Assembly: GCA_033442325.1 (NCBI GenBank)
Contig: JAWQFM010000006.1
Coordinates: 101,771-165,770, forward strand
Length of the DNA stretch: 64,000 bases
Direction of reading: 5' to 3'
Origin: Salpingoeca rosetta
Taxonomy: Eukaryota; Protista; Choanoflagellata
Made by a program: the position numbers and the translations under genes. The notes under the pieces were generated by a model that was not told the DNA's origin, ran no database searches, and was given only the letters and a program-made list of their open reading frames with translations. Every line of letters starts with the position of its first letter. Within the stretch, counting starts at the first letter, position 1. Shown here in pieces: positions 26,339 to 37,931 of this stretch.

Positions 26339-26675
26339 TCAATACACCTTGCCATTGAGCCTGCGGCGCGTTGCGACGGGCGGAGGCAGGGTTGTCTTGC
26401 ATCGTGGGCAAAACCCTTTTGCCTTCTCAATCTTGCGAGGGATGTACGAACACTTTGTGCAATGCACGCCATACTTCTGCCAGCGAATGCCGCACGCATT
26501 GCACAGACGCGCGTCGTTGGGGCCGTCACGCCACATGGGCGTCCTGTTGTCACAGTGGTGGTGGCGGTAGTGGTGGTGGTAGTGGTGGTCAGAGTTGGAG
26601 GGGAGGGTGAAAGGGAGGGCGGAGGAGAGGATGTACACACCCATGTAGTAGCAGGCACACACGCACACACAGTCA

Positions 26676-26770
<95 letters not shown>

Positions 26771-28212
26771 CACGTACGATGTGATGCCGCAGCAGATGCA
26801 GCCGTTGCCCGAGGGATCCACCATCAGGGGTCGCACGCGCGCAATCGACGGCGACGACGACGACGACGAAGAGCAAGAGGATGACGATGACGAGGACGAT
26901 GATGATCGTGATCGGTGCTTGAGGGTGCGCTTCCCCCTCGCAGGCGACACGGGCTTGCTGCTGCGAGAGCGCTTGTGGTGCGTGTGATGGTGGGACGAAG
27001 ACGGCACGCGCTTGGGCTCCCGCGCACGCAACTTGGCGACCTTTGCACGCTTGGCGGACTTGCCCTTTGCCATTGCACCTGGCGAGGGCGATGTTGAGTT
27101 GGACACTGACGGAGACGATGCCGGCGACGACGACGCTGACATGCTTGCGTCTGAGGCGACGGATGCGGAGCTGAACGTGCTCGCTGTGCTGGCTGTGCTA
27201 TCTGAACGCTGGCGCCCAACACCGCGCACACCCTTGCCGCGGCTTACCACGTGCCCCTCATGAGGATGCTGATGTTGCTGCTGCTGCGGATCTTGTTGGT
27301 AGCCGAGGCGCGTGGCCGCTGCGGCGTTGCTCTGGGGCGGTGTCGTTGGCATATTCAAGGGGCGTCCGCACGGGACGGGCACGAGCGACGCCGGAATCAC
27401 GTGCTCGTCGAGCTGGCGCTGGCGACCAAGGTGGCGGAGTGTGGTGTGGTGTACAGATGCGACGGCCCCAAAACTGCTGCTGTAGCTGTAGCCAGCGAAA
27501 CGCGTGCTCTTCTTCCTCTGCTGCTGTTCCTGCTGCCTGATTGCCTGCAATCGGCTGATGGCGTGCAGCGTGTCGTTGTGCTGGGTGGTGCCCTGTGGTG
27601 CCTTGCACAGCAGCGAGTGCTCTTGCGCCAGAACTGTGAGCTCAGCCAGGGCCAGCCTGGACTGCTCGTGGTGTCGCTGTTGCTGCTGTTGCGGCAGCTG
27701 TTGGAGGTGGGGCGTGCTGCTGTTGTTGTTGTTCCCTGCAAGCTCTCGCACGCAGCCGGGGCTGGTGTAACTTGGGCCTTGCGTCAATGGCACCGACGTT
27801 CGGCGGCCAAAGAGGCGGGCGTGGGCCAAGTCAGCGCAGCTGCGCTTGGTGGGATGGTGGTGCTCGTTGTCACCACTTGTGTCCATGGACAGGGCGTAGG
27901 AGGTGTGCATGGTGTGGAAGGCGACCTCATCCCGCGGGTACACGTCCATGCTCAGCACGTCCACATCAAAGACGCCAAACAGGTCCATGAAGCGCCGACA
28001 CCTTCAAACACGCGCATGCGAGACATATCGGGGAATGGGAGGAGGTGTAGGTGAGATGGTATGAGTAAGGAAGAGGGTGGGTGAACGAGGTGGGAATATG
28101 ACACGGATCGCTCCGTGATACACACACATACACGCACAGCAAGCAAGGAACCAAAAATGAAAACAACAAACAACAAAAACCAAAACCAGAGCATCGCCAA
28201 CGACGAAGTCAT

Positions 28213-28533: not shown

Positions 28534-29850
28534 GGCTGCACTGGCGGTGCACCCTTCTTCTCTTCTGTGGTTGTTGTTGTTGTTGTTGGCCCTCGCAGAG
28601 CAGTTTAGGCCAGTCGGTAGGTGCTTTGGTGTTGTTGACCTTTGGCAGGCGGGATCTCGATGGTTTGCTGCTTGGGGGGGGGGGAATAGAAAATGGGAAT
28701 CAAGCGGAGTTAAGGTTTCGTCAGGCGCAGCTTCCTTCACCCACACGATTCAGCCGATCCGTGATGTCAACAGCTGCGTGTGCGTCTCTTTCTTTGCTCA
28801 CTTGGACCTTGTGGGGGGTGCGCGGTCGGAGTGTTTTGGCCAGGTGACAGCTGGTTGTTGGAAAGGGGAAAGGCCACAGGCACAGGCACACAAGGGCCTT
28901 GCAAAGGGAACAAACTGGCTGGTCTGGTCTGGTGTTTCGATTTTGTTTGTTGGTTGTTTGTTGGGTGGCGTCGTGGTTTTTTTTCCTTTTGATTTGGCCT
29001 TCTTGCTTGTGTGCGTGTGTGTGTGTGTGTGGTTTGTGTGCACACCAAGCACGAGCAAGCAGTGGTGCTCTTGCTTGCAGGTCCAAGCGAAGTGGCGAAG
29101 CATTTTGTCCGCGAAATCGGGACAGTACAATTTCGTTAAAGATTTCAATTGATTTTACCACATGTCCTACCAAAACGTGCCAAAAATGACAGCAGCCGGG
29201 GCAAATTGTTGTCCCTGACCTGCAAGGTCGTTGTGGGGTTGGGAGACACTGACATCAGTGTATGCGCGCCACGCGCGCAATGTGCTGACTCATGTCAACT
29301 CTCCTCACACACAGTTTTGCATTGGTGTCTCTCTCTCGCGCTTGTCTGTGTCTTGCCCACGTCAGTCTCTGTCACAGCACGTCACTGTCGCTCTCAAGCA
29401 CATCCTCTCCCTCCTTGCACCCATTGCATGTGTGTATTCTGCTGCAAAACACAAGGGAAGACAAGGGGAAAGGGGGCGCAAAAGCTGCATGTCAACTAAT
29501 GATGAGGCGGGTTAGAATGCTTTGGAGAACACAAACACAAACACAAACTTGCCTCTGGCAGGGCATTCCATTTGAAACACAATCCCTCACACACAACACG
29601 ACAACAACAAAACAGCCAAACCAAACCAAACCAAACCAAACGAACCAACATATCGCACACGTGCACATGGTGATGTAACAACATTCAACGCATCACAACA
29701 AGCCAGCAAGCATGCAAAAGCACAGCACAAAGGAAACAAGGCACATGCACGCGCGTGCGCACAAACACAGCAACACGAAGATGACGGTGGTGAAATGGGT
29801 GCAACAAGTTGAGGAACAAGAACAAGAACAAGAAGCCAAGCATGCGGCGC

Positions 29851-30615
29851 CTAGCGGGCAGCCTCGGCGTTCATGAGCTTGTTGCGGTCTTCGTTGAGGA
29901 AGGACGCGGGCCAGTTCATGTCCTGGATATGGCACTCGCCCTTGGTGAGGCCCATGTAGTGGGCGCCCTCGAGGTGTGCATAGTCAACCTCCGTCACGCC
30001 ATCGTTGGGCTTCGCAAGCACCGCATTCGTCAACTGTCGTGGTGTCGGCGGGGGACACAGATGGTGTCAAGGAGGGAGGGGACAAGATGAAGAGCAGAGG
30101 AGAAAGGGTTCATGTGAGCCAAAAGGAGGGCGATGACGTGATGTGATGTGGCGCAAAGCACTGAAGCTGCAAGACACGGACACCAGTCCCCAACAAGGTC
30201 GCTTCCCAACACGCACACACGCGTTCATATGAACCAACCACACGCATCCACAACACGCAGCACAGAACACCACGCACCATGTTGCAGTAGCCGTTGCCGA
30301 GCGGGCCGCCCTTGTCGTATTGGGTGACATAGTAGTACATGTTGTCGGCAACCTCGGCGGAGATGCCGGAGAGCCACATCTGCGCACCGTCGCGGGTGAG
30401 GTCTTCCTGGGAGTCGCAGCCTTCCTCAACCAGCATGTTCAGCACCTGTCACGAGGTCGGAGGATCGGGCCCCGGGGGGAAGCAACACACAAGAACAACA
30501 CAAGACAAAGAGGGAGGGATGGAGAAGGGGTATCAGCAGGTCAGCAACAAGGAGGAACGCACAAACAAGCACAAACAAGAAACACCCACCAGCCATGTCG
30601 CAAGCTGGACGTCAA

Positions 30616-30657
<42 letters not shown>

Positions 30658-33600
30658 CACACGAAGCGAGCGTAACGCCACACCTCAGCCCAGAAGCCGG
30701 CACCCGAGTTGCCCTGGTATGGCGTGCCCATGGACTGCAACTTGCGGGCACCCTGGGCAGTTGGCAGGTCGAGCATGGAGGATGCGTGATGGTTGAAATG
30801 GGTGGTGGTGGTGGTGGTGAGCAGTGACAACGAAACGATCACACTGCACGAAACTAAACGCGCATGTTGTCAGTGTTGTGCAAGTGGTGCAAAGAAACAC
30901 AAAGACCAGAAGCAGCGCAAAACACCGCCATCTGACCATCACAACCACCAAAACAAAACACAAGCAAACCAATTTCCAGCCACGAAGCAAAAGCCAGACG
31001 CAGTTGCAGTCCCACATGCGCACGGACCTGGGAGGCGTCGACACCGGTCCAGTAGTAGTTGTACACGTGGACGGAGGCAAACCCGCCCTGGGAATGGCCG
31101 AGCAGCCCATACGAGGTCAGGCCCTCCTTCTCCGCAAACTCAACCACGAGCTGGGCAAATTTGTCGTGGGAGCGCGACTGCTTGGGATCCTCAAAGTAGC
31201 GCGCATCATCCCACACCTGAGCACAATTGCACGCACGAGGAACGTGCAATTGGGGAGTGGTGAGACAAAGGTTCATGCGGCGCATAACAGGAACGGCAGA
31301 TCAAGCGATTGGAAAAGATGTGCAGTTGGGGAGGAAGGGAGGGAAAGCTTGTGTGTTGAGCATCCACACATACACGATCACACACACGCACGTACGCACG
31401 CACACGCACGTACGCACGCACACAATCACACAATCACACGCACGTACGCACGCACGCACACACACACACGCACGCACACAATCACACACAAGCACACAGA
31501 CAGAGCAACACAAATTCATGCTCACACATGCATAACAAAACCCAGCCACAAGCGGCAGACACGGGGGAGCGTACGTGGCTGGTGTGCTTCCACGGGTTAG
31601 AGTCGGAGCAGTAGCCGTGCAAGAGGACGAGGGCCGGGTTTGCGTCGGCGGCAGCGGTGGCGTTGCCGGATGCGCGGGCAGTGACGCGCTCGTGCAGCCA
31701 CTTGGGGCGCACGCCAAACCGCATCTAGGCAAGGGCGAGGGGGTGAGGGACCAAGGTGAGACCAAGGTGGAAGGAGAAGGGATGGTGGAGAGTGATGGGG
31801 TGGTGGTGGTGGAGAGGGATGGTGGTGGTGGTGGTGGAGAGGGATGGTGGTGGTGGTGGAGAGTGATGTGGTGGTGGTAGTGGAGAGTGATGGTGGTGGT
31901 GGTGGGTGGTTGTGGTCACTGGATGTGGCATGGAAATGACGTCTCGTGCGTGCAACTGTGTGCAATTGCCACAAACAACATCACGCACGCACGCACACGC
32001 ACACACACACACACATGTACATAAACACAAACACACATAGATATAAAAACACGCACACACACAAAACACCTTCTCTGTGACGGTGCCGTCGTATGTTGCG
32101 TTTGCAGTCTGGAATGCGCGCCAGAGAGCAACGTCGTTTGAGGCGGACAGCGGCGCGTCAATGGCGCCCATTGTCGACACGGGGATGAACGTGTTCACCT
32201 CCTGCACATACACGTTCTTCAGGGAGAAGGGGCCCACAGCAGCAGCAGCGGCGAGCCAGGCAAGGTCCACGTCGAGGCGAAGGACGGGCGCACCGTTGCT
32301 GCCCGCTGTTGGGGCAACGAGCGCAGACGACCACGCAACTGCACGCGTAGGCACGTAGCAAGATGATGTCAAGTGGCGGCGGTCAGGCGCATGAATGGGT
32401 CAAGGGAGGGGAGGTGAGCGTGAACAGGGTGGCAAAAAGGGGGGGGAGGAAAGGGGATAGCGTACATGTCACGTGCGCAAAGGTTGTTGCACATCACAAC
32501 TGTGACAACAGCAGAAGGTATGGCAGCAACAGAACCACAGCTGCAAACGGCAACAGAACCACAGCTGCAAACGGCAACAGAACCACAGCTGCAAACGGCA
32601 ACAGAACCACAGCTGCAAACGGCAACAGAACCACAGCTGCAAACGGCAACTATCTACAACACACATTACACAACACACAACACATTTCCAACACGTTCAC
32701 AGACAACAACAACGACGACGACTGACTTGGGACTTCGTGTCCGGTAAAGATGTTCCTGCCGTGGAGCTCAAAGTAGGCCCTGTAGCGCTCGGCGAGGTCT
32801 GTGAACCCGGCATCCACCTGGAACTGCTTGACCGCGAGGTCGACGACGAGGCGGTGCTGGGCACGGTCCACGTGCATGTCGACCGCACCGGTCAGCTCCA
32901 GGCTGCGGGGCACGATACGCACACTGTGCTCGGCCGTGCGAACAAAGGCGGCGCCGTTGCTGCGCGTGCCCTCCAGCACCGTCTGCACGAGGTACGAGCC
33001 GCACACGTCGGGGACAAAGCTGCCGCCAAACACGCCGTCGTTGGCGAGGAGGTCGTTGTGCAGGCCATCGTCGTGCATCTGCTCCTCCACGCGCGTGCCG
33101 TTGGGGAAGAAGACCTCCAGCTTGGCGGCGGAGACGGCATCGCCGAGGGCGGTGGGGCGAAGGCCCTTGGCCTTGACCAGGCTCGGGTTTGCAGTCACGT
33201 CATACATCTGGGCCTGGAAGCCGAGGTTGTCGTCCTGGCGCATGGTCAGGTACGACGTGAGCTTGCTGAAGATCTCGTCCTGCGACTCGTTCCACACCAG
33301 GAGGATGCCGTCCCCGGAGGTCTTGCTCCTGCTGCGAGCACCCTGCACGCGCTGCAGAAACTCGGCCTCGGCCATGTCGCTCACGGCGAGCGTGAGGTGG
33401 TACGTGCCGACGGCGGGCTTCTCAAACGTGTACACGTCGCCAATAATCTCAGTCGCGCTGTCGCCAACCGGCCAGAAGGACTGGGTCTTGTGGCCCGAGA
33501 GATCGACGGCGTTGCCGCTGGGGTCGCGCAGGGTCGGCTCAAGCCGATCCAGCAGCGGGGACATGAGCGAAAACTGGAACCCCTCGTCGGAGTCCACGAC

Positions 33601-33825
33601 CACATCCACCTCGTAAGTCCACAGCCGCTCGTTGTCGGCCGTCTGCTCAAAACGCATGAAGTGCGTCGCCGACGACTGGAACAGCGCGCCAAGCGAAGAG
33701 TCCGGGATGCCGTGGCGCTTGAACTCGGACGGCGGGCCACCCAGCATCTTGTGGTCCAAGCCGTGGGCGCTGTGCGCCACCACAGCCGCAAGCACTGCAA
33801 ACACAAACACAACAACCTTCATCAT
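29851..33825 (-). CDS. cmfA: Secreted conditioned-medium-factor (Dictyostelium CmfA)-like protein with a C-terminal alpha/beta-hydrolase domain; 7 exons
   Basis: Signal peptide MMKVVVFVFAVLAAVVAHSAHG, then KMLGGPPSEF, MHDDGLHNDLLANDGVFGG, LELTGAV, IAWSSALV, LKNVYVQEVNTFIPVS, LVLLHGYCS, GHSQGG, LQSMGTPYQG, DLTRDGAQMWLSGI, YCNMLTNAVLAKPNDGV, ECH. These are colinear with CMF as I recall it. Symbol denotes homology. Confidence 0.85.
32527..32650 (+). repeat. 24-bp minisatellite (caacagaaccacagctgcaaacgg) x5 in intron 1 of the CMF-like gene
   Basis: Five identical abutting copies, no spacers. Confidence 0.95.
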
Positions 33826-34069
33826 GGCGGTGCGTCCTCTGCTTCGTAATGGTTGTTTGTGTGTGGAAATGTGCAAGTCGCTCCAGAAACCACAAACGAT
33901 ATCGCTTGTGCTTCTTGGAAAATACGCAGGGGAAGTATTGTTGTGATAATTGGTGTGTGATGTTACAAATTTTCTAGCCAAGCACAGGGGGAACCAAAGT
34001 GAGCAAGTGGAGCAAGAAAGGCAGCAGCGGAGAGCACGACACATCGCTGTGCACAAGCACATCATCATC

Positions 34070-34531
34070 ATGTCCACGACAGCAACCGCAGCAGTGGCCA
34101 TGGCCATGGCGACGGCACGCCGGGTGCACGTGGCAAAGGGCTTTGTTGCAAGAGCTGTGGCTTGCGTGGGTGCGACGCCAGCCAGGGCTCAGCTGCACAC
34201 TTGCTCCTGCATGCACACAAAGTACCCGCCAAGGGACCCGCAGTACGACTTCAAGATGTACACGCTGCGGCCAGCCGCCAAGGCACAGGCATCGGACTTT
34301 ATCCATGAGCTTGGGCTCACCAACAATGGCGTCATCGGCTCCCGCCTGACCATCGAGGCCGTGGACCAGTACTCTCGCATGGGTGCGTGCTGTGGTTGAA
34401 GGAGCGGGCGTGTGCTGTGTGTAGTGTAGTGTGTGCGTGTGCTGTATGTGTAGAGAGAGAGAGTGTGTGTGTGTATGTCTGTCTGTATGTCCGTTCTTAT
34501 GTGTGCGTCCGTTCTTATGTGTGCGTCTGTT

Positions 34532-37262: not shown

Positions 37263-37931
37263 ATGGCGATGACAAAGGAGTGCTGTGGCGTGGAGCGCGT
37301 TGAAGACGTGGAGGTTGTGTTGGACGAGATGCTGCGCGTGGTGCATGCGTCCTTCGATGCGTTTGTGGCCCCGGATTTCAGTGAGGAAGGCAAGGCCAAC
37401 TTTCGAGCGCACGCCACGCGCGACGAGATGCTGACCCGAAAGGATACGCACGACTGGTTTGTGGCACGGGACCCCATCACGAAGGAGCTGGCTGCGGTTG
37501 TGGAGGTGCGCGAGAGGCGCCACGTCTCCAAGTTCTTCACCCATCCGTCGCACCAACGCAAAGGGTACGGGCGAGCACTCATGCAGGCAGCATTCGAGCT
37601 GTGTGCAGAACACGCACGACAGCAGCGCCAGCGCAAGCAAGCGACTGCGTTGGAGCAACAGGCTCAGTCACACAAAACAGACGCAGCAAGGGCAGCCACG
37701 ACTCCGACAACGGTCAAGGAGGCAGACAAGGAGGGGCAAAGCGGAAGGCTTGGACACAACGAGGAGGACGACTGCCTTTGCCTTTCTTCTGCACAAGTGA
37801 CGCATGTCACAGTGTGTTCCTCGCCCTACGCTGTGCAGGTGTATTCGAGGCTGGGGTTCGTTGCCACTGATGAAGAGCAGACCGAACACGGCATGCGGTT
37901 CGTCCCAATGCAAGCAACCCTCGAATTATAG
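37263..37931 (+). CDS. Intronless GNAT-family N-acetyltransferase (bacterial type)
   Basis: Single 222-aa ORF: FVAPDFSEEGKANF, HVSKFFTHPSHQRKGYGRALM (acetyl-CoA motif A), VTVCSSPYAVQVYSRLGF, EQTEHGMRFVPM. Confidence 0.88.
   Translation: MAMTKECCGVERVEDVEVVLDEMLRVVHASFDAFVAPDFSEEGKANFRAHATRDEMLTRKDTHDWFVARDPITKELAAVVEVRERRHVSKFFTHPSHQRKGYGRALMQAAFELCAEHARQQRQRKQATALEQQAQSHKTDAARAATTPTTVKEADKEGQSGRLGHNEEDDCLCLSSAQVTHVTVCSSPYAVQVYSRLGFVATDEEQTEHGMRFVPMQATLEL

What the first reader, a model, noticed from the sequence alone, without database searches (positions are those of the whole stretch)
29851..33825. Full-length homologue of the social-amoeba cell-density signal CMF in an apparent choanoflagellate
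Seen: an intact 7-exon gene with a signal peptide and motifs colinear over the full length with Dictyostelium conditioned medium factor (KxLxGxPSEF; DDGLHxDxxANDGxFGG; HGYCS; HSQGG; QSMGTPYQG; YCN..PNDG; CH). Known: CMF is the secreted glycoprotein that starving Dictyostelium use to sense density before aggregation, and related proteins occur in some gamma-proteobacteria. I do not know of the family in animals. Inference: a close unicellular relative of animals may have its own secreted density or aggregation signal (colony formation, swarming, mating), as opposed to relying only on bacterial cues.
Basis: partly seen in the sequence, partly recalled or inferred. Interest (0 to 1): 0.85.

Follow-up and report, generated by a model that had tools for sequence, protein, structure and literature searches.

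The report
Choanoflagellate CMF-family secreted lipase-like hydrolase
This is a real, expressed Salpingoeca rosetta gene (PTSG_01015) that is a full-length relative of the Dictyostelium density factor CMF, but its family is a widespread secreted lipase-like enzyme of bacteria and bacteria-eating protists, so it is not evidence for a density signal in choanoflagellates.

Summary
A seven-exon minus-strand gene (CDS 33825-29851) encodes the 708-aa protein P0001. This is S. rosetta PTSG_01015, which UniRef already names "Conditioned medium factor". RNA-seq from three studies supports all six GT..AG introns. The gene is single-copy and expressed in every cell type, about twofold higher in thecate cells.

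It aligns with D. discoideum CmfA (P34090) at E = 8e-81, 31% identity over about 590 residues.

The density-signal interpretation is not supported. The family has 761 cluster representatives and occurs in at least 419 bacterial species, many non-aggregating amoebae and at least seven choanoflagellates. The protein has a signal peptide, three beta-sandwich domains like Legionella NttD, and a C-terminal lipase-like alpha/beta hydrolase. Ser548, Asp659 and His683 are kept in 259, 261 and 262 of 262 members, CmfA included. In the tree, choanoflagellates form one clade that is not sister to the dictyostelids.

The most likely function is a secreted or food-vacuole serine hydrolase. A density-signal role is not excluded (about 10%).

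In passing: the 1992 CMF sequence is garbled at exactly the two catalytic motifs.

The parts
32727..33825 (-). CDS exon 1 (ATG at 33825). Encodes the signal peptide (residues 1-22), the KxLxGPPSEF motif, and beta-sandwich domains 1-3, including the choice-of-anchor X motif (residues 250-281).
   Evidence: splices to P0001. (junction 32338/32727 in reads and contigs). (NF041940, E 7.3e-10, 38.4 bits against a cutoff of 25). (fold like 4kh9).
33826..33905 (-). 5' UTR (approximate transcript start)
   Evidence: the assembled transcripts X13 and X14 extend to 33905.
32070..32338 (-). CDS exon 2 (end of the third beta-sandwich domain and the linker helix)
   Evidence: (contig junction 31725/32071)
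31575..31724 (-). CDS exon 3. Start of the alpha/beta-hydrolase domain, with the oxyanion-strand motif LLHGYCS (H492 G493 C495).
31028..31216 (-). CDS exon 4. Nucleophile elbow GHSQGG (Ser548).
   Evidence: Junctions.
30684..30752 (-). CDS exon 5. QSMGTPYQG motif. The acceptor is GCCCAG|GGT.
   Evidence: P0001 junction ...DASQ|GARK...; junction 30751/31027, cut +1
30278..30445 (-). CDS exon 6. Cap/lid region with conserved Cys602 and Cys646 (YCN).
29851..30033 (-). CDS exon 7. PNDG (Asp659), CH (Cys682-His683), and the stop codon at 29851-29853.
29700..29850 (-). 3' UTR. It continues about 225 nt beyond 29700.
   Evidence: depth of 110-300 over 29700-29841. The contigs begin 223-228 nt before 29700.

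Best explanation
PTSG_01015 is a single-copy, constitutively expressed S. rosetta gene. It encodes a secretory-pathway protein of about 75 kDa with four N-glycosylation sequons. The protein belongs to the 'conditioned medium factor / choice-of-anchor X' family.

Architecture: a signal peptide; a conserved KxLxGPPSEF segment; three beta-sandwich domains arranged as in the Legionella type II-secreted protein NttD (DUF4785), the second of which carries the Asp-rich choice-of-anchor X loop; a linker helix; and a C-terminal alpha/beta-hydrolase domain closest to secreted bacterial lipases.

The hydrolase domain has an HG oxyanion strand, a GHSQGG nucleophile elbow (Ser548), a PNDG acid (Asp659) and a CH histidine (His683). 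Four invariant cysteines probably form two disulfides.

Most likely mechanism (inferred): a serine esterase or lipase that works outside the cell or in the food vacuole on lipids or esters, plausibly those of bacterial prey, with the beta-sandwich domains providing substrate or surface binding.

Shown here: gene structure, expression, homology, fold, residue conservation and family distribution. Inferred: secretion, catalysis, substrate class and biological role.

On this reading, the density-factor role of Dictyostelium CmfA is a lineage-specific use of an older enzyme and does not carry over automatically to choanoflagellates.
For: Gene model and expression: (about 89-229 normalised units in all eight samples).

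Single copy.

Homology: P0001 is PTSG_01015, UniRef 'Conditioned medium factor'; P0271 is CmfA, P34090; E 8e-81.

Hydrolase identity:
- VIA Z 15.7, 15.4 and 15.3 to BlEst2 6wpx, P. aeruginosa LipA 1ex9 and Burkholderia lipase 8xy5.
- the Foldseek top hits are family I lipases.
- the profile search hits only alpha/beta hydrolases, aligned at the HG strand and the elbow.
- GHSQGG..GTPxxG aligns with Burkholderia lipases.
- after the CMF clusters, the next-nearest Atlas clusters are PGAP1/DUF676/Lipase_2 esterase-lipases.

Purifying selection on the catalytic residues: (Ser 259/262, Asp 261/262, His 262/262; Cys495, Cys602 and Cys682 in 262/262, Cys646 in 258/262).

N-terminal part: (4kh9, E 3.8e-15, TMt 0.57). 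4kh9 is NttD, a type II secretion substrate (PMC6617341).

Secretory features: (only the N-terminus is hydrophobic; four sequons; every family member has a signal-like N-terminus).

Breadth in organisms without aggregation.

Phylogeny.
Against: - No enzymatic activity has been shown for any family member, and I found no paper on the question.
- No Pfam hydrolase family reaches its threshold on P0001.
- In the domain-only model the loop carrying Asp659 has low confidence (pLDDT below 50). The tools do not give coordinates, so I could not measure the triad geometry.
- The one experimentally studied member, CmfA, acts as a receptor-binding signal. Starved cells have about 40,000 CMF receptors and recombinant CMF restores aggregation (PMC2121003 abstract); 10 s of exposure to CMF is enough to rescue cAMP responses (PMC2120463 abstract). 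CmfA keeps the same triad, so an intact triad does not exclude signalling.
- Constitutive expression fits an accumulating density cue as well as it fits a digestive enzyme.
- Bacterial gene neighbourhoods gave no clue to a substrate.
Confidence: 0.6

Rival explanations
1. Autocrine density signal. The secreted protein, or fragments of it, accumulates with cell number. It binds a surface receptor and gates a life-stage transition in S. rosetta, as CmfA does in Dictyostelium.
For: Full-length homology to CmfA. Signal peptide. Steady expression in all cell types would let the concentration track cell density. CmfA signals while keeping the same triad.
Against: The family occurs in at least 419 bacterial species and in many amoebae that never aggregate. 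The choanoflagellate clade is not sister to the dictyostelids. There is no stage-specific or starvation-specific switch, only about a twofold rise in thecate cells. No paper links CMF and Salpingoeca. The presence of a CMFR1-like receptor could not be tested.
Confidence: 0.1
2. Signal-processing enzyme. The hydrolase makes or destroys a small lipid or ester cue, for example by modifying the bacterial lipids that S. rosetta reads. It would matter for cell-cell or cell-bacterium communication through its catalysis, not as a ligand.
For: Intact lipase-like active site. Secretory features. From my own knowledge, not tested here: S. rosetta development is controlled by bacterial sulfonolipids and lysophospholipids.
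Against: This is purely inferential. No substrate information came from gene context or from the literature.
Confidence: 0.15
3. Structural or adhesive extracellular protein, such as a theca or matrix component. The beta-sandwich domains would be the working part and the hydrolase domain would be vestigial.
For: About twofold higher expression in attached thecate cells. Besides NttD, the N-terminal domains weakly resemble bacterial adhesin Ig-like repeats.
Against: Near-absolute conservation of the triad, oxyanion strand and cysteines across 262 members argues against a vestigial enzyme. The thecate enrichment is small next to true theca genes, which are up by 30-fold or more in the same table.
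Confidence: 0.07
4. Bacterial contamination or an assembly artefact, not a choanoflagellate gene.
For: Most family clusters are bacterial.
Against: The gene has six spliceosomal GT..AG introns that are removed in RNA. It lies on a scaffold of about 2.48 Mb between eukaryotic genes, a GATA finger and a GNAT. Orthologues in seven other choanoflagellate transcriptomes form a clade with support 100.
Confidence: 0.01

Closest known systems
Dictyostelium discoideum conditioned medium factor CmfA (UniProt P34090, 699 aa)
   Same: Same length class and the same domain order. 31% identity over about 590 residues, E 8e-81. All signature motifs are shared and colinear, including the N-terminal KxLxGxxSEF, the choice-of-anchor X loop, HGYCS, HSQGG, QSMGTPYQG, PNDG and CH. 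Both have a signal-like N-terminus.
   Different: Not the nearest relative. The choanoflagellate clade groups (support 100) with Phalansterium, Filamoeba, Planoprotostelium, Soliformovum, Copromyxa and Flabellula, while the dictyostelids form a separate long-branched clade. CmfA has a demonstrated density-sensing role with cell-surface receptors. Nothing functional is known for the S. rosetta protein.
Bacterial 'choice-of-anchor X domain-containing / conditioned medium factor family' proteins (for example Pseudoxanthomonas dokdonensis P0130, Xanthomonas, Dokdonella, Tahibacter)
   Same: Same full-length architecture. Atlas structural TM 0.84 over 626 residues. 30-33% identity. NF041940 motif. 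Same triad and the same four cysteines.
   Different: Prokaryotic, intron-less, stand-alone genes with no conserved neighbours. They form their own clade (support 100). Function is uncharacterised.
Secreted bacterial lipases: family I lipases (P. aeruginosa LipA 1ex9; Burkholderia lipases 8xy5, 1ys1, 1cvl) and B. licheniformis BlEst2 (6wpx)
   Same: Alpha/beta-hydrolase fold at Z of about 15, with about 200 aligned residues. HG oxyanion strand, GHSxGG elbow, and a G-T-P-x-x-G segment after the next strand. From my own knowledge: an N-D-G acid motif in the family I lipases.
   Different: Only 14-17% identity. No Pfam lipase model reaches its threshold. The lipases lack the N-terminal module of three beta-sandwich domains. 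The cysteine pattern is different. The substrate of the CMF family is unknown.
Legionella pneumophila NttD (lpg0956, DUF4785; PDB 4kh9)
   Same: Residues from about 25 to 430 match its three beta-sandwich domains (Foldseek E 3.8e-15, TMt 0.57). Some family members hit Pfam DUF4785_3rd. NttD is itself a secreted protein.
   Different: NttD has no hydrolase domain. Identity is 12%. P0001 itself does not reach any DUF4785 Pfam threshold.

Membership tests
CMF / choice-of-anchor X family (UniRef 'Conditioned medium factor') | Full-length colinear sequence homology to D. discoideum CmfA | tested here: met
   E 8e-81, 31% identity, query 133-706 against subject 146-697; the N-terminal motif also aligns.
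CMF / choice-of-anchor X family (UniRef 'Conditioned medium factor') | Choice-of-anchor X motif (NCBIfam NF041940) above the curated cutoff | tested here: met
   38.4 bits against a cutoff of 25, residues 250-281. CmfA, Acrasis and two bacterial members also hit.
CMF / choice-of-anchor X family (UniRef 'Conditioned medium factor') | N-terminal secretion signal | tested here: met
   the only hydrophobic window is residues 1-24, and all 15 members inspected start the same way. No dedicated signal-peptide predictor was run.
CMF / choice-of-anchor X family (UniRef 'Conditioned medium factor') | Acts as an extracellular cell-density signal (the function that gives the family its name) | not testable with these tools
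   Needs a knockout and add-back experiments. The expression data do not decide it.
Alpha/beta-hydrolase fold serine hydrolases (lipase/esterase type) | Alpha/beta-hydrolase fold | tested here: met
   Z 12-15.7 to many hydrolases over residues 33-259 of the domain model; 201 Foldseek matches at E <= 1e-3, and the listed top 50 are nearly all alpha/beta hydrolases.
Alpha/beta-hydrolase fold serine hydrolases (lipase/esterase type) | Nucleophile elbow G-x-S-x-G on a strand-turn-helix | tested here: met
   GHSQGG at residues 546-551. The model has strand 541-547 followed by helix 549-560. Ser is kept in 259 of 262 members.
Alpha/beta-hydrolase fold serine hydrolases (lipase/esterase type) | Acid and histidine in the order Ser-Asp-His, with His after the last core strand | tested here: inconclusive
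   Order and conservation are met: Asp659 in 261/262 and His683 in 262/262, with His following strand 673-679.
Alpha/beta-hydrolase fold serine hydrolases (lipase/esterase type) | Match to a curated Pfam hydrolase model above its gathering score | tested here: not met
   there is no family for P0001. Relatives give only sub-threshold DUF676, PGAP1, Lipase_3 and Abhydrolase_1 hits.
Alpha/beta-hydrolase fold serine hydrolases (lipase/esterase type) | Hydrolytic activity | not testable with these tools
   Needs a biochemical assay.
DUF4785 (NttD-like) three-domain module | Structural match to 4kh9 and a Pfam DUF4785 hit | tested here: inconclusive
   The structural match is met (E 3.8e-15, TMt 0.57). 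Pfam PF20943 is hit by some relatives (P0017 and P0021 above the cutoff) but not by P0001.

The most novel reading that the evidence does not exclude
Choanoflagellates use their CMF-family protein as a secreted density or quorum cue, either as a ligand or through its hydrolase activity on a diffusible lipid. If so, protein-based density sensing by this family would predate both dictyostelid and animal multicellularity. A corollary can be tested in Dictyostelium: CMF signalling may depend on the never-examined Ser-Asp-His active site.
Probability: 0.1. Interest if true: 0.8.

Novelty: already known. Interest (0 to 1): 0.3.

Why it matters
If the S. rosetta protein were a density signal, the closest relatives of animals would have a self-made quorum cue, which would matter for the origins of multicellularity. 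The evidence here points the other way. CMF belongs to an old, mostly bacterial and protist family of secreted lipase-like hydrolases, so homology alone predicts an enzyme.

The useful outcome is a sharper question in both systems: is the conserved active site needed for CMF's signalling in Dictyostelium, and what does the enzyme hydrolyse in bacterivorous protists and in Xanthomonas-type bacteria? S. rosetta has a single copy and, as far as I know, published knockout methods, so it is a clean place to ask.

Tried and rejected
- Pfam on each exon and on the whole protein: nothing above threshold.
- Sequence search of the PDB with the single protein: only marginal lipase hits, E about 0.1. The profile search did better, E 5e-4.
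- Bacterial contamination or assembly artefact: rejected on introns, RNA, neighbouring genes and the choanoflagellate clade.
- Alternative 5' exon suggested by loose read ends at 33816: rejected. The extra letters come from an AAC-rich locus on another contig. Loose ends at 30820 lie in a (GGT)n intron repeat and were treated the same way without a separate check.
- Paralogues in the genome: none.
- Conserved bacterial gene neighbours, such as a lipase foldase: none among 16 loci. ORF calling in these high-GC genomes is crude.
- Literature: no paper holds PTSG_01015, or 'conditioned medium factor' together with Salpingoeca, or cmfA together with Acrasis. None of the papers listed links CMF to serine-hydrolase or lipase chemistry. 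The cmfA hits in sponge papers were 'CMFASW' seawater. The Gomer 2011 review is not held, and the 1995 and 1996 JCB papers are held only as abstracts.
- Searching S. rosetta for a homologue of the CMF receptor CMFR1: not possible, because no tool returned that sequence.
- The domain-only fold was less confident than the full-length model (pLDDT 75 against 86).
Full report
**1. The observation**

The finding's coordinates are exactly the coding span of a minus-strand gene. I located the exon-encoded peptides and enumerated frame-compatible GT/AG junctions. I then confirmed that seven exons splice to a 2127-nt CDS whose translation is identical to database protein P0001. The exons are 33825-32727, 32338-32070, 31724-31575, 31216-31028, 30752-30684, 30445-30278 and 30033-29851. 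All six introns are GT..AG and 238-388 nt long.

P0001 is 'hypothetical protein PTSG_01015 [Salpingoeca rosetta]'. UniRef already names it 'Conditioned medium factor'.

**2. Expression**

Two stranded raw RNA-seq runs from 2026 cover the exons at a depth of about 40-300 and the introns at about 0. The first mate lies on the + strand, as expected for a minus-strand mRNA. Split reads support five junctions. Assembled 2.58-kb transcripts from two further studies (2011 and 2017) carry all six.

The supplementary tables of Fairclough et al. 2013 (PMC4054682) give normalised expression for PTSG_01015:
- 229, 171 and 195 in the three attached (thecate) samples
- 96 in swimmers
- 114, 129 and 90 in rosette colonies
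- 89 in chain colonies

The same tables mark the gene 'NoDomain'. It is therefore strongly and constitutively expressed, about twofold higher in thecate cells, with no on/off stage switch. It is single-copy: every match in the 55-Mb genome is one of its own exons.

Reads that diverge at 33816 come from an AAC-rich locus on another contig, not from an alternative exon.

**3. Homology to CMF**

A cluster look-up identified P0271 as D. discoideum AX4 CmfA, UniProt P34090, 699 aa. BLASTP of P0001 against P0271 gives E = 8e-81 and 31% identity over 591 aligned columns. The similarity runs the full length.

**4. What the protein is**

An AlphaFold2 model built on the family alignment is confident (mean pLDDT 86, pTM 0.88).
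- Residues from about 25 to 430 form three beta-sandwich domains. Their best structural match is PDB 4kh9, Legionella pneumophila lpg0956 (Foldseek E 3.8e-15, TMt 0.57).
- lpg0956 is NttD, a DUF4785 protein exported by type II secretion that promotes growth in Acanthamoeba (PMC6617341).
- The Asp-rich DDGLHxDxxANDGxFGG loop is the NCBIfam 'choice-of-anchor X' domain (38.4 bits against a cutoff of 25).
- Residues from about 455 to 708 form an alpha/beta-hydrolase domain.

Folded alone, the C-terminal domain matches B. licheniformis lipase BlEst2 (6wpx, Z 15.7), P. aeruginosa LipA (1ex9, Z 15.4) and a Burkholderia lipase (8xy5, Z 15.3), with about 200 residues aligned. The Foldseek top hits are the same family I lipases. 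A profile of the domain finds only alpha/beta hydrolases in the PDB, aligned at the 'HG' oxyanion strand and the nucleophile elbow. The single sequence already aligned GHSQGG…GTPYQG with GHSQGG…GTPHRG of Burkholderia lipases.

No Pfam model reaches its threshold, so this is a divergent hydrolase family without a Pfam home.

The only hydrophobic segment is the N-terminal signal sequence. There are four N-x-S/T sequons, the C-terminus is hydrophilic, and the mature mass is about 75 kDa.

**5. Conservation of the active site**

Among them, Ser548 is kept in 259, Asp659 in 261, His683 in 262 and Gly493 of the HG strand in 262. Cys495, Cys602 and Cys682 are kept in all 262 and Cys646 in 258.

The three exceptions are an Acanthamoeba gene model with a gap, one metagenomic protein, and the 1992 CMF entry discussed in section 9. 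Conservation at this level across bacteria and several eukaryotic supergroups is what a working catalytic centre predicts. Dictyostelium CmfA shares it.

**6. Distribution and phylogeny**

An exhaustive HMMER search finds 761 cluster representatives at E <= 1e-3. Of these, 364 are at E <= 1e-30, and most align end to end.

Named eukaryotic members:
- Eight choanoflagellate proteins from seven further species: Microstomoeca roanoka, Hartaetosiga balthica, Choanoeca flexa, C. perplexa, Salpingoeca macrocollata (two proteins) and Codosiga hollandica.
- Dictyostelids.
- Many other amoebozoans: Acanthamoeba, Planoprotostelium, Phalansterium, Gocevia, Filamoeba, Copromyxa, Flabellula, Cochliopodium, Soliformovum and Amoeba proteus.
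- Acrasis kona and Petalomonas.

Bacterial members:
- 419 species-representative genomes encode a relative. The 80 best are all Xanthomonadales/Lysobacterales, including cultured Xanthomonas, Dokdonella, Tahibacter and Pseudoxanthomonas.
- Further members come from MAGs labelled Chloroflexi and Pyrinomonadaceae.
- The four closest ESM Atlas structural clusters are 88-100% bacterial, with Pseudomonadota or Planctomycetota the commonest phylum.

No animal or fungal member appeared among the named hits. This is not an exhaustive test.

A 52-sequence maximum-likelihood tree (quick IQ-TREE, LG+C20) gives these groupings:
- All choanoflagellate proteins plus five environmental sequences form one clade (SH-aLRT 100).
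- That clade is sister (100) to Phalansterium, Soliformovum, Planoprotostelium, Filamoeba, Copromyxa and Flabellula, with Petalomonas.
- The dictyostelids form a separate clade (100).
- The bacteria form a single clade (100) next to Acanthamoeba and Gocevia.

The tree is unrooted and has some long branches, so I draw no conclusion about donors. It does show that the gene is old within craspedid choanoflagellates and is not a specific orthologue of dictyostelid CmfA.

**7. Surroundings**

The flanking genes are a GATA zinc-finger gene (26342-27988, minus strand) and a GNAT acetyltransferase (37263-37928, plus strand). A small divergently oriented ORF lies at 33950-34399. There is no functional cluster. 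The bacterial homologues also have no conserved neighbours.

**8. Interpretation**

The best-supported reading is a secretory-pathway serine hydrolase of lipase/esterase type carrying an NttD-like triple beta-sandwich module. It would work outside the cell or in the food vacuole of a bacterivore. Catalysis, substrate and location are inferred, not shown.

The density-signal idea rests only on homology to one family member. The family's presence in hundreds of bacterial species and in many non-aggregating amoebae shows that density sensing cannot be the ancestral function. The idea is not excluded: CmfA signals through surface receptors (abstracts; PMC3937094) while keeping the triad, and a constitutively secreted protein could report density. 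I put it at about 10%. A related possibility, that the enzyme processes a lipid cue, gets about 15%.

**9. A side result**

The original 1992 CMF database entry (CAA77749.1, P0277, 571 aa) is 96% identical to the genome-derived CmfA. It lacks the first 130 or so residues. Two short stretches also read differently, and those stretches are exactly the nucleophile elbow (…VAHSQGG… reads …LLIVKVV…) and the acid motif (…WPNDGVV… reads …MAEMMVL…). This pattern looks like compensating frameshift errors in the old sequence. If so, it would have hidden the hydrolase signature when CMF was first described. I found no paper in the held library that discusses CMF as a hydrolase.

**10. Verdict**

The gene and the homology are real and already annotated in databases, so novelty is 'already known'. 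The functional inference is speculative and is made less likely by the family's breadth. Interest 0.3.

Noticed in passing
Proteins P0277 and P0271 (Dictyostelium discoideum; not in the window): The original 1992 CMF entry (CAA77749.1, 571 aa) differs from the genome-derived CmfA (P34090, 699 aa) mainly in two short blocks. These blocks are exactly the GHSQGG nucleophile elbow and the PNDG acid motif. It also lacks the first 130 or so residues. The likely cause is compensating frameshift errors, which would have hidden the hydrolase signature when CMF was first described.
   Followed up: partly
window 32540-32640 (intron 1 of the gene): Five tandem copies of a unit of about 21 nt (…cagaaccacagctgcaaacggcaa…) lie inside intron 1. 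(CA)n, (GGT)n and ACGC-rich microsatellites fill introns 2-5. These repeats attract stray RNA-seq reads from other loci (loose ends at 30820).
   Followed up: no
window 33816, and L088 (G000:C1:438083-438109): About 60 reads in run X22 match the gene up to 33816 and then continue with an AAC-rich sequence. That sequence is found only on another contig. This is a mapping artefact of a shared low-complexity stretch, not an alternative first exon.
   Followed up: yes
window 26342-27988 (-), 33950-34399 (+) and 37263-37928 (+): Neighbouring genes. A GATA zinc-finger ORF (PF00320, E 9e-11) lies downstream. A GNAT acetyltransferase (PF13673, E 5e-27), which fits the GNAT-annotated PTSG_01013 of Fairclough et al., lies upstream. 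A small ORF faces away from the CMF gene's 5' end, about 45 nt from the transcript start at the ORF's TTG and about 155 nt at its first ATG.
   Followed up: partly
L064, L069, L071, L072, L078, L079, L081-L087 (Xanthomonas spp.): Many plant-associated Xanthomonas species carry a full-length CMF-family gene, about 51% identical to the gammaproteobacterial query. It has a signal-like N-terminus and no conserved neighbours. It appears to be an uncharacterised candidate secreted hydrolase in these bacteria.
   Followed up: no
Supplementary file 11 of PMC4054682: The held copy of this file is labelled 'upregulated in colonial cells', but its columns are Attach/Colony and Attach/Swim fold changes. 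It is in effect the attached-cell list.
   Followed up: no
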